DNA from: Ascidiella aspersa
Taxonomy: Eukaryota
Length of the DNA stretch: 64,000 nt
NCBI GenBank assembly: GCA_963924565.1
Contig: OZ004615.1
Location: forward strand, 22,382,001 to 22,446,000
Direction of reading: 5' to 3'
In this document: positions 960 to 31,000 of the stretch, piece after piece
Layout: the number at the start of each line of letters is the position of its first letter
Position numbering within the stretch: the stretch's first letter is position 1
Made by a program: the position numbers and the translations under genes
The notes under the pieces: generated by a model
Told to the model about the DNA's origin: nothing
Databases searched by the model: none
The model's input: the letters and a program-made list of their open reading frames with translations, nothing else

Positions 960-2325
960 CAGAGGTTCTTAAACTGGGGTCCGTGAAACCCTTTGGGGGT
1001 ACGTGTACTAGTTTTGGAGGGTCCATGAATAAATAAACGCTTTGACGCCTTCTCCTTAAATTTATTTTGACTTAATTTTAGATTTTTCACTTTTGTTGGA
1101 ACGAAAACAGCAGGTTTCTTTAGTCGGCTTGTTTTTTAACGTCATCCCTAAAAATTCTATACCGACCCTGGTCAACGCGAAACAAAAAAGTGGCTGTTTC
1201 AAAACAAAGTTTACCAACCCTAGGTCTAATTATTCGTGCTATAGCCTTTTCGTGCAATTGGACACGTTTATCAAAAAGTTGTCCCAAACTTGCATTTGAC
1301 AAAGTTAGCCGAAAATGAAAACCAACAACTATTGGGTTAAAAACCAAAGCAGAGGTTTAGTTAAATGCAGTGATGGGATATTAGGGTTCTCGAAACATTG
1401 CATTTTAACAACAACACGCCTGGCGCCAGGGAGCCCACACCCAATGTCACCCGGAACAGCAATAAATTGTCTACCAACTTGTCCGGTCCAAATAAGGATA
1501 GGAAGAGTCTGAAATTCGAATCGTCTGAATCCCCAAGCTGGATAAAACGCCGGGTAAACATTGAGTCACTGAAAATCTAGTTGCCTGTTTGCTGGGCCTT
1601 TTGCGCTAAAAATACGCTCAGCCGTTCGAGGTTCCAGGCTGTTAAACTTGAGATATTCCCACAACTAACGAACGGGGGATCCCCTTTGAGCGTGCAGGAT
1701 GCCATTGGAACTTAGGTTGTTTTTGCTAATAAGTTAGTTCTTGCCTGGTAATACCAGCACGAATAGGTTCGGCTGTTCGTGATGATTTTACGTGACTAAA
1801 ATACTTATAACGATGGTACTTGAATCCTGGCTTATTTTATTAATTGTGACAAATTTCCTCAGTGAAAAGATTTAAATTGCAAAACCAAGATTATAACCGG
1901 CGGCTATTAATTATTGCCAAAACATTTTTTGTCAGGATTATATCAACACTTGTTACATAAATTGTTGTGGTTCTTTTAAACTTTTGCCTAAGGGATTCTT
2001 AAACTGTTTTTAACGCGGACACCTAAGAAAATATTTTGGTTCGCGTTTTAAGCACAGTCAGCAAAAATCCTTTTACGTTGTTAAGCAAGAAAACTTAAAG
2101 AAACCTACTGTTTTCGGCCAGACAAATGTAAAAACTGAAATGGATTCTAAATACTTTCAAGAAGAAGGTGCCAAGCGTTATTTTTTTATTAGTATATCTT
2201 TTTGTGAAAAAATGATTTTATCTTACACATATTACACCAATAATTTATTTAGACTTACATGGACCCCCTATAACTAGTCCACGTAGCCCAGGAGGGGACC
2301 ACGGACCCCAGTTTCGGAATCCGTG
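960..2325. mobile_element. Inverted pair of hAT-like MITE ends (960-1027 and 2258-2325), with a further TIR-like start near 1990
   Basis: cagaggttcttaaactggggtccgtg...actag...gggtccatg is the diverged reverse complement of catggacccc...ctagt...cacggaccccagtttcggaatccgtg. No TSD found. Confidence 0.6.
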
Positions 2326-8880: not shown

Positions 8881-9352
8881 AAGAGATTTTATTTTAATAA
8901 GGAACTGACGATGCCAGTGGACAAACTAATTTTGTGCTATATGGCTTGTGGCGAGATTTGCGAGCTCTGTGATATTACTGGTATTTAGTCAGAAAACAGG
9001 CTTGTTTTAACTTGCTTCTTGATCCATTTATGCATGAAGACAGCACTGTAATTGATACTTAAGCAAAAGCAGATAATTATTTCATAATATAATATGTATT
9101 AGTATCTTAGTTAAGAGTTCAAACACACAACAGACTAAGCCTCTATAGTCTCACCTTTCTGTATTTACATCCTAAAAGCCGGTAGATTATTGTTTTTTTT
9201 TCCAAGGCTGGCAGTATATAGCGTATGCTACAAAATCTTACAGACTATTGAGAGATTGGAACGTCGTACAAGATTATTTGCTGTTTATATTGTTTTTGTT
9301 AAGGATGTTCATTTGCTGAAACCCAACCGCACTTTTGTCGTCGAATTTACAG

Positions 9353-9465
9353 GGCAACAATAGGGTAAACGCACAAGCACCTATACAAGGTTATACGATC
9401 TGCAACGGGAACCGCTTATTTTGAATAAAGTTCGCCCGAAAAAAGCAGCTCTGAAATTAAATAAA
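9353..9465 (+). other. 5' UTR portion of the first coding exon, after a splice acceptor at 9352
   Basis: tttacag ends at 9352; no ATG between 9353 and 9465. Confidence 0.55.
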
Positions 9466-10001
9466 ATGAGCCCTCTGTTCGTCTTATTCCTAACGGTGAT
9501 AGCAACTTGCGCGATCCGCGTCAGAAGCGTCGCTCCGGGCCGACAGATAAACATCACGGTCATGGTTCCGGGGATAGAGGCCCTGAGGTACCTGGCGCTG
9601 GACTCGGAACCGCTTCCTGGCCAGCCGGAACCAAATGGTGCCGAGTACGCGGCGTCGTACGACTCGGAACCGGACTACGGCGATAGTTACAGAGACGAGG
9701 ATCCAGCACAAGAAGACAACTCTTCAACCGGAGGCGATTTCCAGTCAAAAATCGACGAGAGCCAAGTGGAATACGACGGAGAGTATTTGCACAACTACTG
9801 TATCGACGAAGATACGGGTTTGCCGGACATAGCCTGCCTGACCCGGGATTATAACGTCTACCCCTGGTCGTACGTGTTCGCCAAGCCGGCGCTCGAAGTG
9901 GCCCTGGACACAATACACAACACCCCGGGACTGTTGGACGACTTTCGCATCCAGCTGCGTTACTTCGACTCGAGCAACGCCAACGGATTCGCCTCGTCCA
10001 G
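9466..10001 (+). CDS. Coding exon 1: signal peptide, ectodomain start, acidic insert (MSPLFVLF...NANGFASS)
   Basis: ATG in A-rich context (ataaaATG), hydrophobic signal peptide, YPWSY..PALEVAL motif, donor AG|GTGAGT, phase 2. Confidence 0.93.
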
Positions 10002-13000
10002 GTGAGTTGACGGCGATCATGCAAATTGGCCGAACTACCTTATTCTTGGGAAGCGAGTTAGCGACAAAAAAGTCGGTCATTTTAATTGAAAGGACTCTTT
10101 AATCAATCTTTGGAGCATAATGGTTGGAGGTTGTTGTAAGAATATCAAAGCTTATACCGAAGTAGATATCATTTTGATCGTTTCGAATAACTTTTTATTT
10201 ATTTTCAACATCAATTCGAAACGTTCAAAATGATACCTTCGTAAGGTCTTTATTCTTACTATGTTAAATCAATCTCTTTTGGGAATTTTATTTCTTTTTA
10301 CCTCTTCCCTTTATGAGAATCGATCTTTAAATTAAAACGACCCAATAATTTCGTTTTCAAATCATTAGTTTTCGGATAGAGTGAGTGACCGAAAGCTTAA
10401 AAACCGATCTCTCATGTAGGTTACACCACACGTGCTGTCGCATTTAAATAAGCTCACTTAATTCGATTCCATCTTGATTGTTTTTTACGACAAAAATATG
10501 TTACAATTTGCGAAAATTGAATACCTTTTTTTTAAAAATCCATAAGTAAGACTCTTCTGAGTACAGTTTAAAGAAAGCACAAGCGAACGTTCGTGAAATA
10601 AGTGTCTAACTTAAATACCGCATTAGATTAAATATTTGACGAGAAAAACCCTGAAAATGTGTTTTGTGCATGCGCATAATTTAGTACAATGGCAATGTAT
10701 AGAAACGTCCTTTCGTGAAAGTCAAATATACTTATTTAGTCAAGGGTAAGTTAGAGGACGTAAAGTTTGACTCGTTTGCGAACAAGTTTCGGCGTGATTT
10801 ATTTACTGTGAAAGACCAGCACGACGAATCACCAGCGGAGTCAGATTAATGACACTTTTATCTAATCTCGACTCGATCGGAGTTTTTCGACAGAGGCGAC
10901 TTTGAATTTAGCATCGAATTATTAGTCATTGTGTATTTTTGGTGCAACTTTAACCTTCTGTCCAGACGATATCCAAAGTGGAAGTAGCTTTCTAGCACTT
11001 GTAGTCAAAAGTAGCTCTGACATTTACACTGAGATAAACCTGAAGCAATTCTGACTTACATAAGGGCGGAGAAAATTTTCAGCTCTCTGAAGTCTATCGC
11101 TGATAAGTATTGTAAGGGTCACGATGTAACACAAGAGTTACATATAAATATGCTGTGGTCGCAAGGCTTGGTATACTATAAAGAGATGCTCTTCTGAAAA
11201 CTTTTTATTTATTTACCCGACGTTACATAATATACAGTTTACATAGGACAAAAGCTATAATTTTTTTTTTTTCTTTTGTGATAACTAAACATACCGCTTT
11301 ATTATATTTATTATAATCGACAAAAAAACATTTGTTTCCTACCATTATCAAAATGGCGTCTTTTTAATCGCAATGTTTTAAATTCCAATATTCTACTAAT
11401 ATTTTTTTAGGAATTCTATATAAATATGTTGACAATTGTTCTGTTATTTCTCCGCTAAGCCCAAAAAACACGACATCTGTTTAACCTCAAGGTGCTTATT
11501 GTCTTCGAATTCTTCTTTCCGAAACCCGTCTGTGACGTCATATCTAACCCGACTGACGTCAGAGGCATTTTATTGCCGGTTCTGTAATCTACAGTGACAG
11601 CGGACTAAATTACTTGAACCTATTTTGAAAGGATAGTGCAATTTAGACCACCCGCTTGCCCGCGCCTTACTGCTTAACAGTTTTTGACACAAATAATAAA
11701 ACACGCAATCAATGCATATTTATTCTGTTAATATAGGTAAACGAATTTTGAACTAATTTGTCTTTGTGATCGAATGGGTCACTTTTTCGTTTCTATTATT
11801 ACTTTCGTTGTTTTAATTGTATTAATGGTCAAAGGATACACTTATATCTAAACAAAATTCAATCTAAACAAGATTTATAAAACTTTTTTAACTTTCGCAC
11901 AACATGTGTCGGTCCAGTGAGGTTAGAAAAATAAAATCGCATAGATTTTAATCTGAGATTCGCGTTTACGTGCGTATTTCCTTTGAGATAACAGCTAAAA
12001 TAGATTTCGCAAACCCCCAATCCCACTTTGATGTGATAGTGGTAAAAGCTTGAAAATACCAGTTTAAAAACGCGTCAAAATTATAAGTCAAAGGCCACGG
12101 GTAGATGCATTTCAGGACTTTATGGCCAACATTTGGTAAAGTCTATTTGCTTTGGGTAAAAATTCAGACTTTAATACATCACCTGAGGTTTCAATTTTGG
12201 ATTTGTTGGTTTATTTTGCGATTTGTTGGTTTATTTTGTGGGCTTTTAAATTTATACGTAAGTCAAGATTTTCAAAACCGTCAAACAATCCAGCAGGACA
12301 TGCGAAATTCCATTTAGAAAAATATGTGCAAAAAGATAAACGAATCTTCCCTGGGCTCTATAGGTCAGTTGTGCTGATCGTAGATTAGATTTACAATTAT
12401 CCAAACGCGAAGAAAAACGAATTAACACATCCGCATTTAAACTCGCCATTTCCCCGAAAGCCATGCAGTTTCCAAATAAACAAAAGATGACCCAAGGATT
12501 GCGTCTTATCGCCGTCCGCAATCGACCTTCCTCGAAAACAAAATTTTCAGCAATTACTTTTGTCGCCAAATGGCTGCCAGCGATTCCGGCCCGATAGCGA
12601 TTCGCAGTTTCCGGCCCGGAATGACAAAGCAGAGATAAGGGTAATGGAGCCGGCGGCCCACGGCGTGAAGTTCGTCTGTTTTCCGAAGTCCTCCTGTGAG
12701 TCGCGAAATTGCAGTCGCTTGAAAATCGCCGCTCGAAATTCCGCGGGTCATTTCGGAAGAATTTTCGAATTGCGAAGAGCGTCGTGCGTCGCTTTGTTGT
12801 GGGCGCAGAAAAACAATGGTAATTTCGTTGACGATTGTCCCGGGATTTTTTGCTTGTGTCGTTAAGGACGCGAAAGCTATGTTTGCAGTGAGACGGCTCT
12901 GGCTTGCACGACGAGGCAGTTTTAGACACTTATGTTAAACGGCCTTTCATATTTCATTGTTGCTAAAAATAACTTTTTGTGAACTGAAATGAAGATTGTG

Positions 13001-16000
13001 GCTATGTAAGCCAGAAGAAATCACTGACAATCAAAATGGTGAAAAACGCTTTATTTTTCAAGATTTTTTTTTATTCATCTTGCTATTCCCTGTCATTTAT
13101 AAGCTAGATGTTTAACATTAATGTTTGGATCTTTAAGTAGAACTTTAAGTTCAGCTTAAAACTCCATGCCTCTGTAAAAACTTCTCTAATTATTTTGTTT
13201 TAAAATATACTGTTTAGCAAAAGTGTGTATAGCTATTCGCATGTAAAAGACATGTCAGAAAGATACATTGACAATCAAACATACTATTTAGCAAAAGGGT
13301 GCATCGTTTTTCGCATGTAAAAGACGTAAAACATCCATTTGCATACAGTCGTTGTAATAATTAGTTTCGTTTCTCAGGATTTCACAGATCGCTTCGGTAG
13401 ACGCAATGATGCATGACCACATGACCGCTATGATTGGTCCGATGGACGCCTACTCCATGTCACGTGTCGCATCCTTCACTTCTCATTGGAATCTGCTCAA
13501 CTTCACGCCTGGCTGCATTTCAAGGGGACTCAGGGTGAGTGATAATAAGCATGTGGGAAAATGGAGTCTGCGTTTTGTTTCTTATAGACACGATTGAGTT
13601 GAGAAAGACTCATAGACAAAATTGAAAGTGCTCTTCATAGATTTCTGGTTGCCTAAATGAAATAGCAAGTCAAATTAGGGTTGTATTTCTGCAGGATTTT
13701 ATCCAAAAAATTGAGCTTTGGAGCTTAACTGTAAAAGTGTTGTGAAACATAAACTCTATAAAAGTGTTAGGAATACAGGATTTTTGTGTCCGTCGGACAT
13801 ATGCCTCTTTTAGCCTGTCAAAATTTTTTTTTTATTAGAATGGCGACCTAAAACTAAACGTTTTTTTACGCGGTTACGAAATGAACGTTTTGTTTTCAGT
13901 AATGACTGATTGTAATTGGAACAGAGACTTACATTTTTGTTCAGATTGGTTTTGTTTAACATCCCATGCTTAGCAATAGTTTGGGTTGACAAAATTTTTT
14001 TAACTTTAAAAAATTGTGTCGCCGCAGAAAGGCCGAGAAACTCAAAGCAACGATGACCTCGTTGTTTCTGATGCTTGTTCCGAAGCTTAAGCTAATGTTG
14101 AGTCGAGGTTCGTTAAACTCACGGCCGAACGCGCCTATATTAATTTATTTTGGTCGTTGCATCGGATTAGACTTTGAGCTTGACACGGGCCGCAAGATGT
14201 TTGCTGTGATTGACGTCTGTTTACGCCGCCATTAAACGGTTTACGTTTAAAGTTCGACTTTTGTTGTTGGGGAAGGGAATTCGCCGAAAATCGCGCTCGA
14301 GACTGTATGGGCGAAAACAATTAAAAGTCAGACGTTAGTTAAATGTTTCAATGCGATATCTGGAGGTAAAAAAGAGCTGAATTCGCATTTTGTTTGCTTA
14401 AACCACATGCGATTGTGTTGGGACTTGTGATCAATTACCTCAAGTGCGTTGCCGTTGCACGCTAACACCGTATGAGATTGTTGCAAAAGGTGGCGAAGAA
14501 AAGAAAAAGTTAAGCCGCTTTTATCTCGTTCGGAAATCGCCCGGCACACTTGTGTGCTTGAGATCGGAGCGACCTGTAAATGACTCCTACAATTTGCGAG
14601 CAAAATAGTCGCAAACCGCGCCTCTGTGGTGAGTGCTTGGGTAAAACCCGCGTGTTAGTTCCTATTTCAAGCTACAGCGTATAATGAACACTTTGTACTT
14701 AATCTGGTTGCGACCTAAAGGCCAGCTTGACCACACCCGAAAAAAACGAACTTTTTAGGAAATTCGACATACTAGATCTGCCGTATTAGAATTCTAATCA
14801 AGGCCTGGCCTTAATCTGTCGCAGCTGCAGCCCGTAATTAGCCAAGTGTTTTCAACCGACAATTTACTGGAGATGCTTCAGGTTTTACGTAGTAACCGCC
14901 GGAAAAACGGTGGTCTTACAAAGTGGCTATTTCGCGTACCACCACACATACCGTTGAGGCTTTTCGTGGAATTACGAAAGGCCGCCATTAGGTGCAAGGG
15001 AAACACACAATAAGACCTACAAGGCAGCACAATATCTAAAGCAGAAAAATCTCTAGTACTATAACATTCAGACCAACGACATAATAAAGCTAAATAATAC
15101 ACAGTAATATCCACTACAGGATAAGATCTATGACTGGAATCCGGTACAGAGTTGCTAGGCAATATAGCGCTGGGCGGTAAAATTAGTATCAATTAAATCA
15201 AACCATTCCTGCTGAGGTTTACTTTGGAAAGATTCGTTTTCGTTTTAATATTTACCGTAAATTCCTAAAAAAGGCCAATGCACGATTCTGCACATCATAT
15301 CAGTTTGTGGGTTTCATTTAATCTCGACCAAATAACAAACAGTACAAGAACAAACTTTGTCGAAAAACAATTTTTTCTTCGTTTAGAATCATTCAAGCTT
15401 CGTACCTACGAACAGTTCTCCTTGTAGCGTGTCAAGTGTTATTTCTTAGAAATGGTTTTTCAAAGTGTTATAAGCGGAAACATCAAGACCAGGCAAAACT
15501 TGAAACGGATGGCAATTGTCCACCTTCACACAAATAAATCAACGCAGGTTAATTGTACATCCGCTGGCTAATCTTGCCAGATTCACTGAGTGCTGGTTAA
15601 AGCCGAATCACCACTAATATCATGGTATTACCAGTAATGCCTATACATCATCAAGTTGATCTTCAAAAGATCATTACAAGCGCGGGTTATTTTGAAAGTA
15701 GGTCAAAATCAAACAGTCACAACTCATCAGCTTTGTTAAACCAACGTTTCGGCTTACTATTCGGAAAGTTTTCATCGGGGAATGACACACATAGCCAACA
15801 AGACGGACGCGTTGGTTTAACAAATATATAACAGAAGAACTTATTTTTATTATACTAAGCCTGGTAGCAACATCATATTTAACTCATCAGGTTGTTTGTT
15901 AACTGTCGAGTCGTTAAACTTGTTTGTTTTAACTTAAGTTCATTTCGCCAACTGGTTCTTCCACGGTTGTCCAAAGTGAATGCTGTTTTTGACCTATCAC

Positions 16001-19000: not shown

Positions 19001-22000
19001 GGGTGCAAAAACGAACGAATCCCGTTATTTTTGAGAGCATTTCAGTACGTTTTCAAATTGGCTGTCACATGTTGTGACTCACTGCTCCTATGGTTTGTGG
19101 AGAAACTTGATAAAAACTAAGCGTCAAAACACATTTTCAAAGACGTAAAGTGCTGCTTTGGGTTCCAGAAAAAAGAGTGTCTTGTTTTGTTTGTAAATAT
19201 TTATTTGAAAAATTTGCGTACAGTTCATCTAAATAGCAAACCATTGCCAGTTCTTTATTAGTTTTTGTGAAAAAGTGTTGTTCTCCATTGCGTTTCCCGA
19301 AATTAAATGATGATTTGCACAAAATATTTAGTTAAATTAGTACCATCATTGCGTGTTTTAGTCATAACGCAGAAAATAAGAGTTATTTCACCCGCAAAAT
19401 TAGCTACTTTAAAGGCAGTGTTATACCTTCTTCCCTTTTTAGCATTTCTCTACCCACACATCTTTCAATTTCTCAAAGTATCTTGCATTTGGCATGTTTT
19501 TCAAACCCCATTTCGCGCCATTTATTTTCCTGGAAGTGGCAAACTTGCCGAGGTAGAAAAAGGGTCGCATATGTTTGTTTCTAGACCGGCGCCCACATTT
19601 GGACAATCATAAATTAATGCAGACATGGTGACATTCTACGTTCAATTGCTTTATAATTCCGATCAAAAACTCTTTTTTATTATCAGAGACTTTGCGTGGA
19701 ATAAAGCATTGCAACAAAACCGGGTTTTTAACAAAACAGCTTTTTAAACTGCCTTCCAGTGGCCAAACAATCTGCATCGTTTATATCTCGAGCGTTTTTA
19801 CGGTGGAGATTGGTGCGAGGCGCCTCGTGTTTACAGCTTGGTGCAACTGTACACACAACAGGCTCGGTTAGATCGAGTTGCCCGATAGAACTCGCCCAAT
19901 GTCGATGCTGATGCTGCTGCTGCGTCGATGCCATAAGCTTGCCTGTATGCCTGGAGACATATAACGGCAAAAGCGTTGTGTAAAAGCATCTGTATAGGCA
20001 GCAACAATAGCGCACGGCAATAATCACTGTTGCGAGATTTGTAACAGCAATAAAAACTTCGCGATTCTTACACTAAGCGTCTTATTGACTCGTAAACTAA
20101 ACTGTTAGCTACGACTTGTTTTGAAAATTATCGTTTACAGCGTTCGGTTTTGTAGAACGTGCTTGTAAGGTTTTAAGCTTGGCAATTTTTTCACCAGAAT
20201 ACAATAGCGTTATTATCTTGAAACACTGCTCCAGTTATTACGCGTATAGTGCTACTGGATGTCGTGCAATGTTTGGGAAATTTTGTAGGAACACAACACT
20301 TAAATTGTAGGGTTATATTGGCCGTTTGGTACGGCTGAGCATATTCGTTCCAACATTGTTAAATCATTAACTATTTCCTTCTTAATTTGTTGTTCCAAGT
20401 CGTTTTTTTTTATGAAAGCACATATTGGCACAATGTAAGTTAGCATAGAACAAAAAGTTAAATGAAGGGTTGAAATAATACCAACATCACTTTTACTTTG
20501 TTACCTTCTGTTTTACTTATTTAATTCAACAACGTTCATCATATAACCATCGTACAAAGTTTTAAAATTTAAAGGCACACGGCCTTTTCAAGTATATTTG
20601 AAAGTCGTGCAATCATTCGAAAAAAAGTTGAAACAATAAGAAGAGCTGAAACAAAGTGGTACACAGTCTTTTATCAAATTACCGAAAGTGTTTTAAAATT
20701 TTACGTCAACACGAAGGCTAAATGTGCCTTAACAGCGCATTTTAGTAAATAGTGAAAGACTCTCATACAACGTAAAATGAGACGAGAGTAATTTGATTTG
20801 AAACTGTGCATGTGGTGAAGCCACTTCCGTGTCCATCGACCTCAAGAGATTAATCCCATTGCTCTTGCAGCAAGCGCGGTCGACGCCCTTCGCTAATCCA
20901 AGGCCGAGATAAACCGAACCGGGTCATTAGTAAGCCGAAAATATTGCAACCGCTCTCTCTCTGTCTTGCTTGGCAGCGCTCGCCGCCTGGGTCGCCTAAT
21001 CCTTGGACCTACGTCATTCGGTGACGTCACTTGGACCTCTGTCGCGACCTCTCTGGTTTTTCGGCGTTCGATTTCGAGACATGAGTCTCCGACATTCTGC
21101 GAAGCAGGGTCTCGAGATTTTTTTTCGACTTATGTAAGGATAGGTGTCGTTGTTTTTACTGGAAATTTTAGTTATAAAACCGATAAACAACTGAAATATT
21201 CGTATGCAGGTGTCTACCACTGCGATCTATAGTCTTCAAGAAGTCTATATGATCAATGACGCAGTACACATGTCATAATACTTGATGAAACGATTTCGGT
21301 TGGCCCTCCTGAAGTTTACGATGTAACTAATAAACAAACTAAACAGCTTACTTTACAATTTGGTTCTTTTTAGTGCTCGCGAAACAGCAGTAAACAATTC
21401 TTAACTGGCACCTACAATCGCCTCATTACAGTTTCTCTATAGAATGTTTAAAAATTGGTTCTTATAAGGTATGTCCAACTGTTTTCCGTATGGTTTATTC
21501 GCGAAAGAGGTTTCATAAGCTTGACACTTGGTTTCCTGCCATACAAAATTCGCACGGGTTTCTCCAATCGGCATACTCTTACACGCCGGAAGTTTGTCCA
21601 AAATCAAAACAGAAATCCTATGAACCGAAACACTCATATAAACAATGTGTATAATCTGTGATCAAGCCCTTGCCTTGCTTGCACGAAAATCCTGATTAGG
21701 CCGACCGATTTTTTTTTTGAGCCTTTCTGAAAGTTAAGTTTGCAGTCCGACTGTATCGGTCACACTTTTCGAAAGCATCATGTGTAGAAGTCATAAGTAT
21801 TCGATACATTTCTAATTTTTATATGAACCGAAACATTCATATACACAATGTGTATAATGTGAGTTCAAACCCTGACCTTGCTTGCACGAAAAATCCTTTT
21901 GGCCGGCTGTCCTTTCCGGAGGCATCATTCGCAGAAGTCATTTGTTTACGATAAGCTTTTTATTTGCAGAGCCCGTACAAAGGCGATGAAGCAGCTACGA

Positions 22001-25000
22001 CCTTGGTGAGAACTGGACCGGTTGAAACACAGGTTGGAAACTGCGTCGCATCGATCCTCGGTTACTACAACTGGTCGACCACAGCCACCGAAGTATTTGA
22101 CGACAACCTTCATGAAAGGTGGGTACGAAACAATTGAACGATCGTAATCACCTTACATGAGATTTATAAGCGATTGGCAGTTAAGAAATGGCTAAAGCAA
22201 TTTTCAAGCCCCGGTTAAGTGAACACCTTTTTTCCAAGGCCCGAAAGAGTTGAATAGTCTTTCCAAGGCCCGAAAGACTCTAAAGTAATGTCGTGTATGG
22301 TAGAGCCTAGAATCAAGTGTTTTAAAGCTAAAAATCGCAGTTACGACGAACCTTATTCTTGATTGGTGAAATATTAATTTGTCAAATTTTAAATGCTGTT
22401 AATAGCTTTAATCATATTTTGGGGAAGTTTCTGTAAATAATTTAAAATTTTAAAAGAAATGAGATAAACTAATATTGTACGCCAGCGAAAAGAAAAATGT
22501 CACTGAAAACATCACATCAACATTAGCAGTATAAGTAATCCGTAGCATTAAGCCATACTTCAAGGAGACAAATTCGAATTCGTAAAAAAACAAGCATCTT
22601 AAAGGTAAAATCCTGACAAAACTAAATGAATGTGGGAAATCCTTTATTCTCAGCATCACCAAAAATCTGATTTCCTTTTACACAGCAGTGTTCGGTAACA
22701 TACACTCACAGTGTGGCTCCATTATGGAAAGTGTAGCATTGCGCTAAGCCAGTAAACGCATTAATCCTCCACACATATTAGCAGAAAGCCGCAAGCATGC
22801 GCGTCACACGGGGCCATGTGTCCAGGCAAAATGTTGTGTGTGGTGACCATACACCCGCTCGACCTTTCGGCGCACGCAACGTTGTAGAATTCGTCAATAT
22901 CTTATATAAGCGCGAGGGCTTCCCAGAAGAGAGATCAACGTTCCTGGAAGAGACTGGAACCAGTCCTATAGCCGCATTTTTCGTCGACTTACGAAAAACC
23001 GACGCCATTTTGCGAGCTCGGTCTGTAATTAATTGTTTTACTGGCCAACATATTTATTTTCTGGCAACATCTTGTTATTTGTTAACGTTTATCTTTAACA
23101 ATTAACATTGAGTTGTTATAAAAGACGTCTTATGAATATCCAGTGGGTAACGTTGTTAATATGTGTTTGCGGAGATTTCAAGCAACCATCATTGTAAACA
23201 TATAGCATCGGAATTCATCTTGTTATTATAAAATAAATTAGCAACATGATTAGGAAAATTCTGAAATCAGATATTAAAAAACATTTCGGTTTCAGCCCCA
23301 ACTTTTTGAAGTGCTTGACCGATGATGTTATATTACCATTGGTTTGACTCTGCGGTCTTTACAATGTTTACAAATGAAAAAAGTTGTGATATGCGAGCTG
23401 TTCGTGGTTCAGTATTCAAACCGCTCTAATCCGTTTATGATCAAGGTTATAATTTCTCACATTTAGATTGCCAGCTTAAATCATCTTCAGTGTACAGACA
23501 TTATTTATTAGCATCACCAACAAGCCGATTCCATCTAAATATAAGCGCCTTGCACGCATTCCTTCATTTTCAGATTTAACTATACTCAATTTGTTTTTAT
23601 GACCAGATTTCATTACTTTATGGCCGAAGGGATATACGAGCAAGTGATAAAGACAGACCCTAATTACAAGATGGAGCAAATTCGCCTGTCAGAATACTTG
23701 CAGGCCGACGGAACTTACAGCTACGACACGGCCATGAAGGCTCTCAACAACTTTGCCAGAGGTGAGAAAACAGTTGCCTACAAACTTGCTTGTATAATGG
23801 GCATTTGTTCCTTTCGGTTGCTTTACTAAGAAATCATTGACTTTGTCGCCGATTTATAAAATATGTGGTTCAGTTATATCGTAGTAAAACAGCCAGATAA
23901 CGTGCACATTGAATGTTAGCTTAATGAGGCAAGCATTATTTTTTTCCTTTCTTGAATTTATTTGTTAAGGGTTATATAATGTCAAATAATAGATTATTTT
24001 TATAGTTTTATTGGCCTTTAACAATAGAATACTCTAGCAAAGCGAGCAATTCATGTCAGACACCATTAAAAGATCGTAATTGCCAGCAAAGGCATCGTCA
24101 GTATATCTTATTTCGGATGAATCAATCTGAATTGTTGTTTTTCTCGAGTATTCAGCTGTTACTGATCAGGTCGACATTTAACTTGCAAAGGTCAAGGTGA
24201 TTTCCAATATCACATATTCAGTGCAACATTGGTCTCTAAAACGACCTTGTATTGCCAGAACACATGCGATGACAAAAATTGTAAGAAAATCAGTAATCAA
24301 AATCAGGAAAGATAAATTATGTTTCACAAATTTGGTGTCAAATGTAGGCTACAGAAAACCGAAACATTGAGTTCAAGCGGTTTAGAAGAGTTCGTCGAAC
24401 GAACCTATGCTCCAAACTGAAAATGAATCATTCTGAGAATCGAAAGATTCGGTCCCATCACCAATTCGGCAACGCCTTTCATCCTCTAGCGATAAATAAC
24501 CTCAACTTGTGACCGGGCCGTTGGTTTGTGATCTGCCAATGTTTTCAAAATCCGTTTGAGATTGGCGGTAATCTGACAACTGTTTGATTTGTGTTGTTTC
24601 TTGATCAAAGTGTGAGACCTGCACAGATATGTGGAAACTTGTTTCTTGATTTGTGCCACCAGCCTTTAACATTATTATACCGTATAAGGTAAGGGAATAC
24701 ATTCTTTAGTATAAAGCTTGTTTATCAAAATGGTCGCGAAAGGTTGGGTTTTATAAAGATTTCTAGAGCTATTTACAATGAAGAGTCAATATTGTTTCAG
24801 TGGTTTGTTACAAAATTAAATTGACAATTAACATCATTTTCTATTAGCATTTGCTCAATTTTATCATTGTAGTCAAAAGAAACACAGGTTTCTCAAAAGG
24901 ATCTTTGTTTAACTTTACGAAATGGCATTGTGGAGTATTGTTTAGGTGCAATGTATTTTTCCTGAGCAAAATTAACTCAGCAGGTTTGAGAGAAATATAC

Positions 25001-28000
25001 CCTAGCTTAACTTTTGTGGTTTAAGAATAGTTAACAAGTTATTCAAATAAATACACAGGCTTCATCTTCTAAAAAAGAACGGCTATGACAGAATGATTAA
25101 TGCTTAAAGCCTTCTAAAGGAAGTCAGCCAAAATTATACTGGAACCAAGAAGTAAAAACAGAACCATGCAGATTCATGCCACAACACTAGAAAGAAAGCT
25201 TGGCTTGCTGCATTCCCGTCAAACAGCAGATTGGGCGTTTTCGCAAGGCTATGGGACCAAAGATGGGCGATCTCTTCAGTTCAGATTTGTTTTGGTGTTT
25301 ACTCCTCGGACGTTAGCTTCTGCTAGCTCCCGTTACCTTTCCGCCACTATTTTGACAATCCTGACTTAAACCTGCGCCCGACAACCGACCAGTATTTTTT
25401 TCTTCCGACACGCATTAAAGCATCCGCCCAACTTGATCGTGTTAATTTTAACGTTGGCAATAGCAAGTCTTTGCATAGAATAATGCAAAGTCTTGGCATC
25501 ATAAAGGATATAAGTTGCAGTAAATTTATTGGAAAAAGGTACACAAGGGAGTCATCTTAGGTTAACGTTCGGAACAAATCTATCGGAATAAACAAAAAAA
25601 AACATCGGAAATGAATCACAAAAATTATTCGAAATTATCACACAATGTTACCTTCTTCTGTATGGGATTTTACATTCCCAAGAGTCGCCTGTTCGCATTT
25701 GATGTGTGATTATAGAAGCGTCTTTAATTACATTTTAAAAGAAGGAGATTGATAATTGGAATGATAAGTAAAGATTGGGAATATCGATTAAACTTGTACT
25801 TATTGTACTTCATTTGAGCGAGATTTTGCCTTCTCTAAATCCAAACTAACAAATCGTAGATCCACTTTAAAACGAGTGAAACTTCGGGAAAAAACTCTTT
25901 CAAAGCCCACAGAACAGTACTGTCGACTTTAAGGAGTTAAACTCGCGACACGAAGATTTACACGCAAATGCAAGGCGTCCATATTCCCAGAACAAACGGC
26001 CGATAAGCCCTGGGCAATGTTTTTAATGTCAGCATTTCGGCAGCAGCTTTTTGCATCGAAGAATGTCAAGGCTTAACTGACGACGGCCGCTAACGCTTAA
26101 CTAGAGAGCAAATCTCATCGATTTTAGTCAAAGCTTGAGCGAAGAAGGTATAAGGACATGCAAAGGAAACATGAAACAAGTATTAAGTAGAGATGGCCGT
26201 TTTCTATACGAAATACCTTAGGGAAATTCTATACGAAATACCTTAGGGAAATTCTATACGAAATACCTTAAAGATCACATTTCCGCACTTTCGTCGATTA
26301 CAAACTCCCATTCTTACAAATATTTTGCTTATCAACTGTTTGGCCTAAAAATATTTTTCCTTTTTTATGTGGTTCACTAAAGTCCTTAAGGTTCGCCATT
26401 TTAATACACTTTTAGCATAACTTCTCAGTTTATTAATAGAACTTCGACAAAGTTTTGCGTGATACTTTCAAATTAGGCCGGTATTAAAGTTCAATAAGCC
26501 ACAGGCGGGTATGAAGCGACAGCTATTACCCTTGTTTATTAGAATAAGATCGACTATTTTGTCGCACGCCCGACCCAAATCACGTCACATCGATAAGAAG
26601 TTCTCCAAATGACTAATTTTTCCGAGAAGTGTTTTTATTTTCATAAATGCGGGGGCGTCAAATAAACGGTGGATTTTTTCGAACTCGCAAAAATGTCTCA
26701 CGTTGCTAAAATAATTTATCCGTAATGGAGTAATTATGCGTGTAGGATCATTGTGTCAAAAATTCTGTATACTTTTTATTTGATAGATAATTTCCTAAAT
26801 GGTTTTACGATATATTCTGAAACAAGTCGTGTTATTAAAGGGCCTCTCTGTTGTATTCGTATAACTTTAATTTGGTACAAGTAACGCATAATTTTAATAG
26901 TTGTCAAACCTCGTGGTATGCCTAAAAAGGTTACAGTATTGCGAATGGCTAATATAAGGTGACTTGTCTTTTGGGGGGGGGGGCTGTTTTGTTTGAATGT
27001 TACAAGCGAGTAAGTATTCCGTGAAAACGCGTGTAGCACAGCATAACAGACTTTAGTGGGATAGCAACGGTAAAAACTTCCCTTAATCGTCAATCGTGTT
27101 CGCTTTGAGTGGCATTTGATTATTTTTAGTTGCAGCTAATAGCTTGTGTTATATGACTTGAAAGTAGGTCACTCGGACAATGCTAGATCGCAAAACATTC
27201 TCTCCAATGTTAATTTCAATTAGTTTTGCCATTTTGTTTTACAAAAGTCGTACATATATGGACTAAAATGAGTAAATTGGCGCGCCGTTGGAGCTAATCG
27301 TTAGAGGTTTTTATAAAAAATCCGGCAAAATATTGTTTTTCCAATGTCACAAAATCACATTTACTTAGAAAAACTATTTTTAAAATAAGGACATTTTAGA
27401 TGAAATGAAGTAACAGTAATGCTAGCTCCTCAAGCTTCGGTTTGTGTAGTTGACGCCGCCCTAGATTTATTCAAATGCGTAAACCACGTCTCGCGTAGGC
27501 CTCTGTGACATCATAATCGTAAAGACGCCCTTACTGTCACGTACGCAAGAGACTACACATTTTGCCCGGGAAGTATAGGCACGTCATTAGGAATTGCGAG
27601 CTTTTTAGATTTCCATCTAAAGGGTCTTCTAGCTCGGTGTCCTATGGGTCATTGCCCGTATATATTTGGTAATTGCGATTCGTTTTGGTTGTTTAGGGCG
27701 GTCGCAGGCTATTTTGGGGCCAATAATAACATCATCAAGGTGTTTTTCTTGCTCGCAATGCACCGAAATCAGTTTAAACCTAACAAAGCCATTCTCGTAT
27801 ACCGAAATTTATGATTATGTGTGTCAAGATCAATATTTAATATAAATAAAGTTTGTCTGTCAACGGTTTTATTAAAAACCAAAAGCGCGAGATTCTGCGT
27901 CTGACATGTAGATTGCCCATCCTTGAATACTTTTCCCTACCACCCAAAAGTAATCCCTGTAATCCCAGTAAAATAAACTGCTTCAAAGGGCAAGAATAAT

Positions 28001-31000
28001 CTGTTTTGCTGCGAAAAATGTCGGTTTCTTCATTTCAAGGCTATAACACCTCTTTTTGCGCCAAAATCTACATTAAATGTGGTGCAAAATCTCGATTAAG
28101 CTAATCTCGCGTACTTTGTCTTGTTGTTCTTGGACCCTTCAGATTTTCGGTCTTCAGGATCACTTACGCAATGCCGTGACCAATCGTTGTTTTGGAAACC
28201 GGGCGACCGCCGAAGTCATTAGCCTCTGCCCAGTTCAGCTCGGGCGAAATTAGGCGGCGGTTTTTTTCTTCGCGATAAAATCATACATTTCTAGCCGTCC
28301 GCGCAAAAACGGAATCTAATGCAAGTAGAGCGCTTGATTCAAGATATCGTAGCCGCATCTTTAAATCGGGCGGTCAAAATGCACTCTGTTTTTCTCGCTT
28401 TGCGGCGCAACTAAAATAATTGGCAATCATTTTCGAGGTTTTCGGTCTGGTTTACGTAGGCAAAAGTTGACTCTGTTAGATTCCTTCGAAGTGTTTTATC
28501 GTTTAAGGTAGAGTAATTGCCGATTTGCTGACGACAGACTGCCGTTTGTTTGTTGTCGGATTTCTGTTGAAGTAACAAACCAGGCATTGACGCACATTCG
28601 TTCAAAAAGTGCATCGTTTTATCTTCAGCCTGCAAATTATGGACATAAACAATATGAAACAAAATCGATTAATTTGTCTTTTAGGCCTTTAAGTTAAATG
28701 TCACACAATCTTACCCACTGTTTCACATTTTGATGTTTCAAAGTGTTTAAAAAGATCTTAAATATTTGTTGCAATGCCACATCGGGAAAGAATGAAACAA
28801 TCGCATTTTTTAGGTTTCTAGCTATAAATACTCGGTTAGTATACTAAAATAAATGGCTGTTGTAGTTTACATACACGGTGTATCCCTTAAGTATCTCTGG
28901 GTAAGAGAAAGCTGATTGTTATACAGCCGCATTGTAAAGAAGGCTACAAAATAATAAAACGTGCCAGTTATTTATAGGCAAGACCACCCAAAGGATTTGA
29001 CTCAAGCCTCTATACTATTTCTGTTATATTTCTGTTGTTGCACAATGTTTTGCACTCGTTTAAAGTTTTATTGTGTCCTGAAGTAAAGGTTCAAAAGAAT
29101 ATTTTTGTGTGTACTGCGACCACAAAGAAGAAAATGGCGAAATTAAGCCGAAATCCTGTGTTTGTAACGACAAAGTTATATAGTACTGCCAATGCTGCCA
29201 GTAAAACTGGTCACAAATAGGGAAGGCATCTTTAGTTGTCGACAAATGTAAAGATATTTTACTTTGAAGAAATCTACTTACCTGTAGCAAATGATATAAA
29301 AAAGCCTTACATTGCGACGAGCGTGCGAGTTCGCATTGACTATTCAAATAACTCTACGTCGTGAAAACAAGTTACGCAAACTGTTGCAATTTTATACTCA
29401 GCACAAGATTGCGACGTTGTAGGTCGACGCCCCACACTAGGAAATTCCTTCAACTGACAGGCTTTATGGCTTGTGCCTTCGTGAGTAGTGCTTTGCCACT
29501 TCTTTCCTTCAGAGCTGGAGACAGCTGAAAGTCCACCGAAAACGGCTTTTACAGGAATCGCAACGAATCAAAATATTTTGCAGGTTTTTCTGATAGGATA
29601 TTGGTGTTTCGCCGGCGACTGGGTTCGAAGCGTCCAAGCTGCTCGCCATATTAGGAGCTTCGGTTGTTATATGCCTTTTAACTATCCTTCAAAACTATAC
29701 TCAGCTTAAAGTATACCTAAAACGGCTATTTCAGGAATGGATATATTTTGCAGTTGTTTGATAGGACATGTGTTTTTCACCGTCAACTGGATTTGTAACG
29801 TTCAAGCTGCTGGCCGTATTAGGAGCTTAGAAAGTTCTTTTTCCCCTAACTGTCCTTGAGAGTTATAGACAGTTGTCCGCCGAAAACGACTTTTCCGGGA
29901 ATTGCACCGAACGAAATATATTGCAGGCTTTTTGATAGAACGTGTGTTTTTCGCCGTCAACTGGGTTCGAAGCTTCCAAGCTGCTGGCCATATTAGGAAC
30001 TTTGGACGTTCTTTGCAGCTGTGAGCGTGGGTTAAAGCCGTAAAACAAGCTTGCCTGATGATAGCTCGCGTGTGGACTATTCCGCGCCGGGGTCGGCAAT
30101 CTTGCGTCGGGCGATGTGCCCATTGCGGCAATCGAAGGGATTTAGATCACTATCAGACATTGTCGGAAAACCCGTGAAATTCGCGCCAGTTTTAAAACAA
30201 CCGCACGACGGCCATGACCCATAGGATGGAGAGTTTATTTTGTCAAGTTGCTTTAAGCAGCGCCTGGAATGCAAGGTTTTCTCGCAAAATATTAGATTGA
30301 TTTCTTGCATAAGCGGCAACACGTAGCTCGCCTTTACACGCGACGGCTCGTGTCCTTGTGAGTTCGCGGTCGCACTGGGCTAATCTTGACACGTATACTG
30401 ACAAGTTTATTGCTCGATCATAGCCCCGCACGCAACACGGGCTTAAATGCCATGGCATTTGCAGCGAACAGAAACCGAAAAGTATATAGCTCATTTAACC
30501 GACAGGTGCACATCAGGGCAACATCACGTATAGTCGAGGTCTAATGGGTTGCCCGAAGGGTGGCCATCAGTTGTTAACTTCAGCTTTTAGAACCCCGTTT
30601 GTTTAAGGTCTAACATCATTTATATCAATATGTTTAAACAAAAAAAAACCTATCGAAAGATGATGTGTTTTCTTTCGAAAATTAATGTGAGCGTTTGGGG
30701 TAGCAGCAACCATCTATTGTCATGTTTTAGTTAAAAAATAACTTTTTGCTTGAATATTCGAACAATTAAGAGAAAAAAATTAATAAAATAGTTAACATTG
30801 AAGAAGGAAATATTTGGGAGGATGTGGAACAATTAAGAGCCGTCACTTAATGTATTCTTTCAACTTAGTAGACTGACTATATACAGCGATTTTTAGCGTA
30901 CATATTTTATCGAGTTTTATTCTTCGATTCTCATCTCAATGCAGTTTACAGCGAGCGTTATATAACGTTAGTTCGTTTTACATGAAGCTGGCAACGTATG

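What the first reader, a model, noticed from the sequence alone, without database searches (positions are those of the whole stretch)
9571..9858. ~90-aa acidic, tyrosine-rich insert with a new Cys loop at the start of the receptor ectodomain
Seen: 96 residues lie between the first strand (INITVMVP) and the conserved YPWS motif, containing 25 D/E, 4 K/R, 9 Tyr ([17 protein letters not shown]) and a C-x11-C pair ([13 protein letters not shown]). Known: vertebrate NPR1/2/3 have only about 5-6 residues here, Tyr in acidic context is the substrate of tyrosylprotein sulfotransferases, and natriuretic peptides are not established in tunicates. Inference: an orphan receptor with a sulfotyrosine/polyanionic module that captures a basic ligand or cations, or acts as a tethered regulator. 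This is the best candidate for an undescribed signalling system in the window.
Basis: partly seen in the sequence, partly recalled or inferred. Interest (0 to 1): 0.78.

Follow-up and report, generated by a model that had tools for sequence, protein, structure and literature searches.

The report
Tunicate guanylyl cyclase receptor acidic insert
The first exon of a sea-squirt relative of the vertebrate natriuretic-peptide receptors really carries an extra 96-residue acidic, tyrosine-rich loop that all sampled sea squirts share, but what the loop does is still untested.

Summary
Window 9571-9858 encodes 96 aa (25 D/E, 4 K/R, 9 Tyr, C-x11-C) between strand INITVMVP and YPWS, in exon 1 (9466-10001) of a complete receptor guanylyl cyclase gene.

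It is not an intron. One run holds both a GT..AG exon1-exon2 junction and an unbroken contig across the insert. 25 homologues keep the frame open.

It is not unique. The Ciona intestinalis, Styela clava and Clavelina lepadiformis proteins named 'atrial natriuretic peptide receptor 1-like' or 'guanylate cyclase' carry 99-, 67- and 64-aa inserts at the same place. 77 of 80 scorable other receptor cyclases have 4-5 residues there.

The insert has three parts:
- a conserved helix ([10 protein letters not shown]);
- a hypervariable acidic, Tyr-rich stretch that AlphaFold2 leaves disordered;
- a Cys loop, present in 18 of 26 homologues.

The four full-length tunicate proteins lack the two vertebrate disulfides Cys60-Cys86 and Cys164-Cys213.

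Tyrosine sulfation is plausible. The segment is extracellular, Tyr clusters with acids beyond shuffles, a TPST orthologue is in the genome, and sulfated cionin is reported from Ciona. It was not shown, and the ligand is unknown.

Verdict: a real, conserved, undescribed variant of a known receptor family.

The parts
9347..9465 (+). minimum 5' untranslated part of exon 1
   Evidence: A contig of run X2 spans 9347-9902 at depth 9.8. The piece upstream of it has depth 2.7.
9466..10001 (+). coding part of exon 1 of a receptor guanylyl cyclase gene (aa 1-178 plus two bases of codon 179)
   Evidence: ORF. The spliced joint 10001|13378 with GT..AG ends is in run X2. GC is 0.55-0.60, against 0.33-0.35 in the flanks.
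9466..9540 (+). signal-peptide-like hydrophobic N-terminus (aa 1-25; cleavage site not determined)
   Evidence: Read from the sequence. AlphaFold2 gives a helix at 3-20. No signal-peptide predictor was available.
9547..9570 (+). strand beta1, INITVMVP, with a conserved N-x-T sequon
   Evidence: Invariant in the three closest homologues. AlphaFold2 gives a strand at 26-34. It aligns with LTVAVVLP of rat NPR1.
9571..9858 (+). the 96-aa insert (aa 36-131)
9571..9618 (+). insert part 1: conserved amphipathic helix and PLP turn ([16 protein letters not shown])
   Evidence: 12 of 16 and 8 of 16 residues identical to P0001 and P0002. The P-G-I-x-A-F-x-x-L pattern recurs in the family. Helix 37-46 has block pLDDT 89 and 81. 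In the full-length model of P0018 it is helix 37-52 with pLDDT 94-82.
9619..9795 (+). insert part 2: hypervariable acidic, Tyr-rich, predicted disordered stretch (Tyr at aa 61, 65, 71, 75, 103, 107)
   Evidence: pLDDT is below 50 for aa 60-105. Only 17 of 61 and 14 of 67 aligned positions are identical to the two closest homologues. Two non-synonymous variants, A59S and T88I, lie here.
9799..9837 (+). insert part 3: Cys loop C112-x11-C124
   Evidence: Both Cys are invariant in A1. 18 of 26 homologues have C-x9-14-C ending 7-12 residues before YPWS. The 10-residue block pLDDT over aa 111-140 is 87, 89 and 83.
9859..9918 (+). YPWSY motif and helix alpha1 of the ANF-receptor fold
   Evidence: Aligns with rat NPR-A 1dp4 residues 14-61. 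Helix 133-151.
10002..13377 (+). intron 1 (GT..AG), with a very high-copy repeat at about 10106-10256
   Evidence: Joint and depth tables.
13378..13546 (+). exon 2 (ANF_receptor domain)
   Evidence: Joint. tblastn with P0018 gives 68% identity. Pfam PF01094 scores 20.1 bits, below its 25.4 cut-off, for this 57-aa piece alone.
21955..62983 (+). remaining exons: ectodomain, transmembrane, kinase-homology and cyclase domains. The last roughly 59 aa lie beyond 62983 and were not found in the window.
   Evidence: tblastn hits of P0018, Ciona, Phallusia and others. Pfam PK_Tyr_Ser-Thr 31.9 bits, and Guanylate_cyc 58 and 58.2 bits, on single exons.

Best explanation
The stretch is genuine coding sequence of exon 1 of the ascidian counterpart of vertebrate NPR1/NPR2 (GC-A/GC-B) receptor guanylyl cyclases. 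It is a tunicate-wide insertion in the loop between strand beta1 and helix alpha1 of the membrane-distal lobe of the ANF-receptor (periplasmic-binding-protein type I) ectodomain.

It has three parts:
1. A conserved amphipathic helix.
2. An acidic, tyrosine-rich, intrinsically disordered stretch of about 50-60 aa. Its sequence and length change fast, but its composition is kept.
3. A short Cys loop that leads back into YPWSY.

Shown here: the anatomy, its presence in transcript-derived contigs, its conservation pattern, and the absence of the two vertebrate membrane-distal disulfides in the four full-length tunicate proteins.

Inferred:
- The helix and the Cys loop are structural. They probably pack on a lobe that has lost Cys60-Cys86, the disulfide at the chloride site near the dimer interface.
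- The disordered stretch passes through the Golgi and is sulfated on several Tyr by TPST.
- This would give each receptor chain a flexible polyanionic arm. The arm would attract a cationic ligand or partner electrostatically, or tune its access to the binding site.

The ligand is unknown. The confidence given (0.4) is for the inferred mechanism; for the anatomy alone it is about 0.9.
For: Anatomy and reality of the insert:
- Exact residue counts.
- GC 0.556 in the insert, against 0.55-0.60 in the rest of the exon and 0.33-0.35 in the flanks.
- Run X2 holds a GT..AG exon1-exon2 junction and an unbroken 556-nt contig over 9347-9902. Its depth is 9.8. The spliced exon 2 contig has 9.2 and the intron pieces 2.7-6.0.
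- All 23 rows of alignment A2 keep the stretch before YPWS in frame, and 21 of them span the whole insert from strand beta1. 16 of 22 short ORFs stop right at the shared exon end.

Family:
- Named orthologues with 99-, 67- and 64-aa inserts in Ciona, Styela and Clavelina.
- 77 of 80 scorable other receptor cyclases have 4-5 residues at this place.
- Pfam finds ANF_receptor, kinase and cyclase domains.
- The modelled ectodomain matches rat NPR-A (1dp4/1t34), E 1e-36, TM 0.87-0.91.

Three-part structure:
- pLDDT is below 50 for aa 60-105. The flanking blocks score 81-89.
- The same pattern appears in the full-length homologue P0018: helix 37-52, disordered 53-84.

Disulfides:
- The four full-length tunicate proteins lack the positions of rat Cys60-Cys86 and Cys164-Cys213 and keep Cys423-Cys432.
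- The disulfide map and the chloride-site location come from passages of PMC4049422.

Sulfation conditions:
- In 25 homologue inserts pooled, Tyr is 8.1% and D+E 19.1%. 24 of 25 are net negative.
- 74 Tyr have at least 3 acids within +-5 and at most 1 K/R. Shuffles give 45.5 +- 5.5, and 0 of 2000 reach 74.
- A TPST orthologue is in this genome, E 1.2e-19 to human TPST2.
- Sulfated tyrosines are reported in Ciona cionin (passages of PMC8149874).
Against: - No direct evidence of sulfation, ligand binding or any functional effect.
- Individual Tyr positions are mostly not conserved. Only one Tyr of the insert is invariant among the three closest homologues.
- Two homologues have 1-2 Tyr, and one insert (P0019) is net +2.
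- The 25 sequences are related, so the shuffle test overstates independence.
- Six of 26 homologues lack the Cys loop. The Cys loop and the disulfide losses are therefore not strictly coupled: P0018 lacks both.
- The disulfide state of the Cys pair is assumed.
- The only run on record as RNA (X4, about 6% read) gave zero depth on exon 1 and two reads on exon 2. Transcript evidence therefore rests on X2, whose library type is not on record and which also holds unspliced pieces.
- The position of the loop relative to the chloride site and the dimer interface is inferred from fold topology. It was not measured, because the tools return no coordinates.
[quoted passage not shown] From memory, Asn13 in this very loop is one of those sites. 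If so, this loop may not be near the ligand.
Confidence: 0.4

Rival explanations
1. It is a tolerated, expandable surface loop with no ligand-related role. Only the helix and the Cys loop matter, for folding and stability of a lobe that lost its disulfides. The acidic, Tyr-rich middle is a solubility-constrained spacer that drifts freely.
For: The middle is hypervariable in sequence: 17 of 61, 14 of 67 and 8 of 67 aligned positions are identical in pairwise comparisons. Insert length ranges from 40 to 112 aa. It is predicted disordered. Both non-synonymous variants seen in exon 1 lie in it. A paralogue in the same genome has only 28 aa there.
Against: Tyr at 8.1% in a disordered stretch is about four times what the window insert's own base composition predicts. 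From general knowledge, Tyr is usually depleted in disordered regions. Tyr clusters with acids beyond shuffles, 0 of 2000. A long loop is kept in every ascidian order sampled.
Confidence: 0.3
2. It is a fast-evolving species-specific recognition surface. For example, the receptor might act on gametes, as sea-urchin sperm receptor cyclases do, with the loop co-evolving with a partner from the other sex or from the environment.
For: Rapid sequence and length turnover with the frame maintained. Receptor cyclases serve as sperm chemoreceptors in echinoderms (titles and abstracts in the listings: PMC4137060, PMC4557273).
Against: No expression data place this gene in gametes. The ascidian sperm attractant pathway in the listed paper PMC6226504 uses a Ca2+-ATPase (title and abstract start only). 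dN/dS could not be computed because no orthologue DNA was available.
Confidence: 0.1
3. It is a low-affinity cation-binding (Ca2+/Mg2+) or salinity-sensing element, or a tethered acidic pseudo-ligand that occupies a basic site of its own ectodomain.
For: Net charge is -21 over 96 aa. From fold topology (inference), the loop sits next to the region that holds the allosteric chloride site in NPR-A. The Cys60-Cys86 staple of that site is missing in the tunicate proteins.
Against: There is no recognisable Ca-binding motif, and Pfam finds nothing in exon 1. The acidity varies widely between homologues, with net charge from +2 to -23. Nothing explains the Tyr enrichment.
Confidence: 0.12
4. It is an artefact: an unrecognised in-frame intron or a mis-assembled stretch.
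For: 27 in-frame GT..AG pairs of at least 45 nt exist within 9560-9870. The RNA run X4 gave no reads on exon 1.
Against: The X2 contig crosses the insert unbroken while the same run splices intron 1. Three runs of one study show the same DNA with no insertions or deletions in exon 1. GC and GC3 are like the rest of the exon. The frame is open in 25 homologues, and public protein models of Ciona, Styela and Clavelina include it. An open frame by composition alone has probability 0.02 for this one sequence.
Confidence: 0.02

Closest known systems
Vertebrate natriuretic peptide receptors NPR1/GC-A and NPR2/GC-B
   Same: The domain order is the same: ANF_receptor ectodomain, one transmembrane helix, kinase-homology domain, cyclase domain. 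P0018 is 66-68% identical to them over the intracellular part. The modelled ectodomain of homologue P0018 superposes on rat NPR-A with TM 0.87-0.91. The YPWS-type motif and the juxtamembrane Cys pair are kept.
   Different: 96 aa (40-112 in relatives) instead of 4-5 between beta1 and alpha1. The four full-length tunicate proteins lack the Cys60-Cys86 and Cys164-Cys213 positions. Most tunicate orthologues carry an extra conserved intracellular juxtamembrane insert of about 50 aa. No natriuretic peptide is known outside vertebrates (abstract of PMC6878697), so the ligand is unknown.
Ciona intestinalis 'atrial natriuretic peptide receptor 1-like' (P0027), with the Styela clava (P0033) and Clavelina lepadiformis (P0036) proteins
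   Same: This is the same gene family and most likely the same gene. Identity to the window's exons is 65%, 56% and 58%. The inserts are at the same place (99, 67 and 64 aa), are acidic and Tyr-rich, and carry C-x10-11-C.
   Different: The sequence of the middle part is barely alignable. These are automatic database entries. Six searches found no paper that describes the insert.
Acidic sulfotyrosine segments of other surface receptors (chemokine-receptor N-termini, the hinge of glycoprotein-hormone receptors, PSGL-1, GPIb-alpha). Named from memory, not from any call.
   Same: An extracellular, disordered, acidic stretch with several Tyr next to D/E. In the glycoprotein-hormone receptor hinge there are also nearby disulfides.
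   Different: There is no sequence relationship. Sulfation is not shown here. No receptor guanylyl cyclase is known to me to depend on receptor sulfotyrosine: the one paper holding all the search terms was about plant peptides.

Membership tests
Receptor (membrane) guanylyl cyclase of the NPR1/NPR2 type | ANF_receptor ectodomain of the periplasmic-binding-protein type I fold | tested here: met
   Exon 1 aligns with rat NPR-A 1dp4 residues 14-61, E 0.04. Exon 2 scores 20.1 bits on PF01094, below the cut-off for this single exon. The orthologue P0027 scores 88.9 bits on PF01094. The P0018 model matches 1dp4 at E 2.6e-36.
Receptor (membrane) guanylyl cyclase of the NPR1/NPR2 type | Kinase-homology domain followed by a class III cyclase catalytic domain in the same gene | tested here: met
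   Window exon 55497-55730 scores 31.9 bits on PF07714. Exons 61361-61576 and 62149-62334 score 58 and 58.2 bits on PF00211. The exons are collinear with P0018 and Ciona.
Receptor (membrane) guanylyl cyclase of the NPR1/NPR2 type | Complete gene with the C-terminal end of the cyclase domain | tested here: inconclusive
   The last hit ends at 62983, which is Ciona residue 1195 of 1254. The final exon was not found in the window and I did not fetch the DNA beyond it.
Natriuretic peptide receptor in the functional sense (binds ANP/BNP/CNP-type peptides) | Conserved disulfides Cys60-Cys86 (chloride site) and Cys423-Cys432 shared by A- and B-type receptors | tested here: not met
   Cys60-Cys86 and Cys164-Cys213 are absent in four of four full-length tunicate proteins. 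Only Cys423-Cys432 is kept. Window exons 1 and 2 likewise show no Cys at the Cys60 and Cys86 places. The definition comes from passages of PMC4049422.
Natriuretic peptide receptor in the functional sense (binds ANP/BNP/CNP-type peptides) | A natriuretic peptide ligand in the same organism, and binding to it | not testable with these tools
   [quoted passage not shown] Its Table 2 gives the Ciona receptor 5 binding-pocket residues shared with human NPR1, which has 15. Its additional files could not be opened.
Tyrosine-sulfated extracellular receptor segment | The segment enters the secretory pathway and is extracellular | tested here: met
   It has a hydrophobic N-terminal signal-like sequence and lies inside the ectodomain. 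No dedicated signal-peptide predictor was run.
Tyrosine-sulfated extracellular receptor segment | Tyr flanked by acidic residues with few basic ones, in an accessible or disordered stretch (a rule recalled from the literature) | tested here: met
   In the window, 6 of 9 Tyr have at least 3 D/E within +-5 and at most 1 K/R, and 5 of 9 have D/E at position -1. Across the family the count is 74 against 45.5 +- 5.5 in shuffles. pLDDT is below 50 for aa 60-105. Sulfinator or an equivalent was not available.
Tyrosine-sulfated extracellular receptor segment | Tyrosylprotein sulfotransferase present in the organism | tested here: met
   12 PF13469 matches on contig C6. An exon of locus L004 matches human TPST2 at E 1.2e-19. 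Sulfated cionin is reported in Ciona (passages of PMC8149874).
Tyrosine-sulfated extracellular receptor segment | Sulfate actually present on the tyrosines | not testable with these tools
   This needs mass spectrometry or 35S labelling.

The most novel reading that the evidence does not exclude
The disordered arm is multiply tyrosine-sulfated and is required to capture a cationic peptide ligand. That would make this the first receptor guanylyl cyclase whose ligand recognition depends on sulfotyrosine on the receptor. The arm could then serve as affinity bait to find the unknown tunicate ligand of the NPR1/2-type receptor, and so show what these receptors bound before natriuretic peptides appeared.
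Probability: 0.2. Interest if true: 0.75.

Novelty: new variant of a known kind. Interest (0 to 1): 0.45.

Why it matters
Tunicates are the sister group of vertebrates. This gene is their closest counterpart of NPR1/NPR2, and its ligand is unknown. The work here shows a conserved, lineage-specific three-part module in the ectodomain, together with loss of the two vertebrate membrane-distal disulfides. That tells anyone modelling or de-orphanising the receptor that the vertebrate ectodomain is not a safe template for this part. It also gives a concrete, cheap hypothesis to test in Ciona, a tractable model: sulfotyrosine-assisted capture of a basic ligand. If the loop proves to be a passive spacer, it remains an example of compositional rather than positional constraint in an extracellular disordered region.

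Tried and rejected
In-frame intron. Rejected for four reasons:
- The X2 contig crosses the insert unbroken while the same run splices intron 1.
- GC and GC3 match the rest of the exon.
- The frame is open in 25 homologues.
- Public protein models include the stretch.

Internal tandem duplication as the origin. Tandem Repeats Finder found nothing in 9400-10050, even at score 30.

Pfam on exon 1 alone: 0 families.

Foldseek on the exon-1 model: nothing significant. The best hit was NPR1 at E 2.2 over 48 columns.

RNA run X4: zero depth on exon 1 and two reads on exon 2 in the ~6% of the run that was read. It gives no information on splicing of the insert.

Paralogues with the same insert in this genome: none. 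One paralogue on contig C1 has a 28-aa linker.

Earlier notes of this scan: nothing near the place. By words, there was only an unrelated hammerhead note.

dN/dS between species: not possible, because orthologue DNA could not be fetched.

Position of the loop relative to the ANP site, chloride site and dimer interface: not measurable, because the structure tools return no coordinates. What I say about it is topology-based inference plus recalled knowledge.

Literature. Six searches found no paper describing this insert or sulfation of a receptor cyclase. The library holds only CC-licensed PMC papers and bioRxiv, so this is not proof of absence.

Outgroups. Amphioxus, echinoderm and hemichordate orthologues were not among the proteins retrieved. 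'Tunicate-specific' therefore means only that, within the 119 + 25 proteins examined, tunicate-like sequences alone have a long linker. The unnamed exon-1 ORFs (P0001-P0023) carry no organism names. I take them for tunicate by similarity only.
Full report
**1. The observation**

Window 9466-10002 (+) reads as one open frame. It starts with a hydrophobic signal-like N-terminus and ends at a GT donor.
- Between INITVMVP (aa 28-35) and YPWS (aa 132-135) lie exactly 96 residues, window 9571-9858.
- They hold 25 D/E, 4 K/R, 9 Tyr and two Cys spaced C-x11-C. Calculated pI is 4.05.
- From the base composition of these 288 bases, Tyr is expected at 2.1% and D+E at 8.4%. The observed 9.4% and 26% give P = 2e-4 and P = 3e-7.
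- No tandem repeat underlies the stretch.

**2. The gene**

Open segments further along the + strand carry unmistakable ANF-receptor, kinase-homology and cyclase motifs.
- A full-length homologue found later (P0018, 1163 aa) matches 18 stretches in order from 9496 to 62983.
- Single window exons reach Pfam PK_Tyr_Ser-Thr (31.9 bits) and Guanylate_cyc (58 and 58.2 bits). Exon 2 scores 20.1 bits on ANF_receptor.
- Exon 1 alone gives no Pfam hit. It aligns with rat NPR-A (1dp4) residues 14-61 from YPWS onward, E 0.04.
- The last roughly 59 residues of the protein lie beyond 62983 and were not found in the window.
- I built no joined protein of the window's exons. Exons were searched singly, and natural database proteins stood in for the whole.

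**3. Is the insert coding and expressed?**

- GC is 0.556 in the insert, 0.55-0.60 in the rest of exon 1, and 0.33-0.35 upstream and in intron 1. GC3 is 0.65.
- Four runs were laid on 9200-13700.
- X1 and X3 cover exon and intron evenly, so they look like DNA.
- X4, the only run on record as RNA (about 6% read), gave zero depth on exon 1 and two reads on exon 2. It says nothing about the insert.
- X2 has no library type on record. It holds a contig that joins 10001 to 13378 with GT..AG ends, so it contains spliced RNA.
- In X2 a 556-nt contig runs unbroken from 9347 to 9902, across the whole insert, at depth 9.8. The spliced exon 2 contig has depth 9.2. Intron and upstream pieces have 2.7-6.0.
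- No joint or depth drop occurs inside exon 1. No insertions or deletions were seen in exon 1 in any run.
- X2 also holds an unspliced exon-intron piece, so some of its depth may be pre-mRNA or DNA. This is good evidence but not final.
- Of the six exon-1 variants listed, four are synonymous. The two non-synonymous ones (A59S, T88I) lie in the middle of the insert. Twenty further variant rows over the whole laid stretch (9200-13700) were not shown by the tool.

**4. Relatives**

- A word search with exon 1 found two ORFs, 54% and 43% identical, with inserts of 89 and 96 aa and both Cys.
- A profile of the three sequences, run against 1.84 billion representatives, found 25 proteins at E <= 0.001 and 21 at E <= 1e-10.
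- Most hits are 109-215-aa ORFs that start like exon 1. 16 of 22 stop right after the shared ...S.R exon end, as genomic exon-1 ORFs do.
- One hit is a full-length receptor cyclase (P0018).
- Searching with P0018 returned named tunicate proteins:
  - Ciona intestinalis 'atrial natriuretic peptide receptor 1-like' (P0027);
  - Styela clava, same name (P0033);
  - Clavelina lepadiformis guanylate cyclase (P0036);
  - an N-terminally truncated Phallusia mammillata model (P0034).
- Their inserts are 99, 67 and 64 aa, with C-x10-C or C-x11-C.
- The window's exons are 75% identical to Phallusia, 65% to Ciona, 58% to Clavelina and 56% to Styela. The organism is an ascidian closest to Phallusia among those seen.
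- Of the 119 proteins P0027-P0145, 80 could be scored for the linker. 77 have 4-5 residues, and the three named tunicates have 64-99.
- The 39 unscored proteins are N-truncated isoforms, fish forms with a 4-residue linker that my pattern missed, or invertebrate models whose start I could not place. None showed a long linker.
- Rat NPR1 has LTNTS at this place.
- The genome itself (308.6 Mb) holds one copy with this insert. It also holds one paralogue, on another contig, with a 28-aa linker that opens with the same GIEAW.

**5. Anatomy of the insert**

- *Opening helix.* Across the family the insert opens with P-G-I/V-x-A/G/S-F/L-x-x-L.
  - AlphaFold2 on the exon-1 alignment, window sequence first, gives a helix at aa 37-46 with block pLDDT 89 and 81.
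  - In the full-length model of P0018 the matching helix 37-52 has pLDDT 94-82.
- *Disordered middle.* A stretch follows with pLDDT below 50: aa 60-105 in the window protein and 53-84 in P0018.
  - Its sequence is barely alignable: 17 of 61, 14 of 67 and 8 of 67 aligned positions are identical.
  - Whole inserts range from 40 to 112 aa.
- *Cys loop.* 18 of 26 homologues have C-x9-14-C ending 7-12 residues before YPWS.
  - Two more have four Cys arranged differently. Six have none.
  - In the window model the 10-residue block pLDDT over aa 111-140, which covers the loop, is 87, 89 and 83.
- *Composition is conserved where sequence is not.* In 25 inserts (2050 residues) Tyr is 8.1%, D+E 19.1% and K+R 6.5%.
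  - 24 of 25 are net negative. 23 of 25 have three or more Tyr.
  - In the four full-length proteins, insert Tyr is 7-15%, against 4-6% in the rest of the ectodomain.
  - 74 of 167 Tyr have at least three acids within +-5 and at most one K/R. Shuffling within each insert gives 45.5 +- 5.5, and 0 of 2000 shuffles reach 74.
  - An acid at position -1 occurs 45 times, against 32.5 +- 4.8 in shuffles, and 14 of 2000 shuffles reach 45.
  - The sequences are related, so these are not clean probabilities.

**6. Disulfides**

Rat NPR-A has Cys60-Cys86, Cys164-Cys213 and Cys423-Cys432. The first lies in the chloride-binding site near the dimer interface and is conserved in A- and B-type receptors (passages of PMC4049422).
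- I aligned rat, lamprey and axolotl receptors with Ciona, Styela, Clavelina and P0018.
- All four tunicate proteins lack both Cys of the first pair and both Cys of the second. They keep the juxtamembrane pair.
- The window's exons 1 and 2 likewise have no Cys at the Cys60 and Cys86 places.
- The Cys loop is therefore a new pair in an ectodomain that has lost the old membrane-distal pairs. P0018 and five others lack it too, so the exchange is not obligatory.

**7. Fold**

The P0018 model's ectodomain (pLDDT about 90) matches rat NPR-A 1dp4/1t34 at E 1e-36 to 1e-35 with target TM 0.87-0.91. NPR-C comes next, then GABA-B and mGlu ectodomains. The intracellular part was poorly modelled.

**8. Mechanism**

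Shown: a three-part, extracellular, conserved insertion at the beta1-alpha1 loop.

Inferred from the topology of this fold class: beta1 is the central strand of the membrane-distal lobe. Its C-terminal loop neighbours the loops after beta2 and beta3, which in NPR-A form the chloride site and carry Cys60-Cys86. The helix and Cys loop may therefore buttress that region. I could not measure this.

For the disordered middle I favour tyrosine sulfation, which would give a polyanionic arm that attracts a cationic ligand or partner.
- The necessary conditions are met: secretory route, acidic Tyr context, and disorder.
- A TPST orthologue is in the genome. There are 12 PF13469 matches on contig C6, and an exon of L004 matches human TPST2 at E 1.2e-19.
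- Sulfated tyrosines are documented in the Ciona peptide cionin (passages of PMC8149874).
- Nothing shows that sulfation occurs here.

I put about 0.4 on this mechanism and about 0.9 on the anatomy. The rivals are a passive spacer (0.3), a cation-binding or tethered regulator (0.12), a species-specific recognition surface (0.1) and an artefact (0.02).

**9. Known or new**

The gene belongs to a well-known family. Its Ciona, Styela and Clavelina counterparts, inserts included, are already in public protein sets under automatic names.
- PMC6878697 (abstract and passages) treats a Ciona receptor. [quoted passage not shown] It does not use the word 'insertion'.
- Six full-text searches found no description of this module, nor of sulfotyrosine on a receptor cyclase.

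I class it as a new variant of a known kind. It is of moderate interest: a clear, testable structural peculiarity of the tunicate NPR1/2-type receptor, not a new signalling system.

Noticed in passing
window about 50680-50900 (+), inside ORF 50626-50988: The tunicate orthologues (this window, Ciona, Clavelina, Phallusia, and less closely Styela) carry an extra intracellular juxtamembrane stretch of about 50-65 aa between the transmembrane helix and the kinase-homology domain. It is very highly conserved (...[33 protein letters not shown]...). It is absent from rat NPR1, axolotl NPR2 and P0018. It is far better conserved than the ectodomain insert, and its basic run looks like a regulatory or trafficking element.
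   Followed up: partly
G000:C6:4139296-4177518 and G000:C6:22505247-22507518 (loci L003-L006): There are six tyrosylprotein-sulfotransferase-like loci: five in tandem within about 40 kb, and one elsewhere on the same contig. The single one (L004) matches human TPST2 at E 1.2e-19. All five N-terminal matches in the cluster contain 1-2 stop codons, which may be exon edges or pseudogenes.
   Followed up: partly
window 10106-10256 (intron 1): A very high-copy interspersed repeat. Summed contig depth is about 77,000 in X1 and 122,000 in X3, against 50-130 beside it. Many loose ends and an opposite-strand joint 10141/10238 suggest an inverted-repeat (MITE-like) element. It also collects RNA reads in X4.
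   Followed up: no
L002 = G000:C1:19155690-19158869, ORF 1495-1812 (-): A paralogous receptor-cyclase first exon in the same genome. It has only 28 residues between beta1 and Y-R-W-S, opens with the same GIEAW and has a single Cys. Exon 2 follows about 100 bases downstream, so its intron 1 is tiny compared with 3.4 kb here.
   Followed up: partly
window 21955-22134 (+) and alignment column 304: All four full-length tunicate proteins and the window share a Cys in V-G-N/D/E-C-V where vertebrates have F or Y. It is an unpaired, lineage-specific Cys in the ectodomain.
   Followed up: no
proteins P0012, P0014, P0015, P0017, P0018, P0019: A subgroup of homologues lacks the Cys loop. Five of the six instead share a His-rich motif just before Y-P/S-W-S (for example F-D-I-E-R-F-L-K-E-H-H-H). 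P0018 also lacks the intracellular juxtamembrane insert. They may be a second paralogue class or a different tunicate lineage.
   Followed up: no
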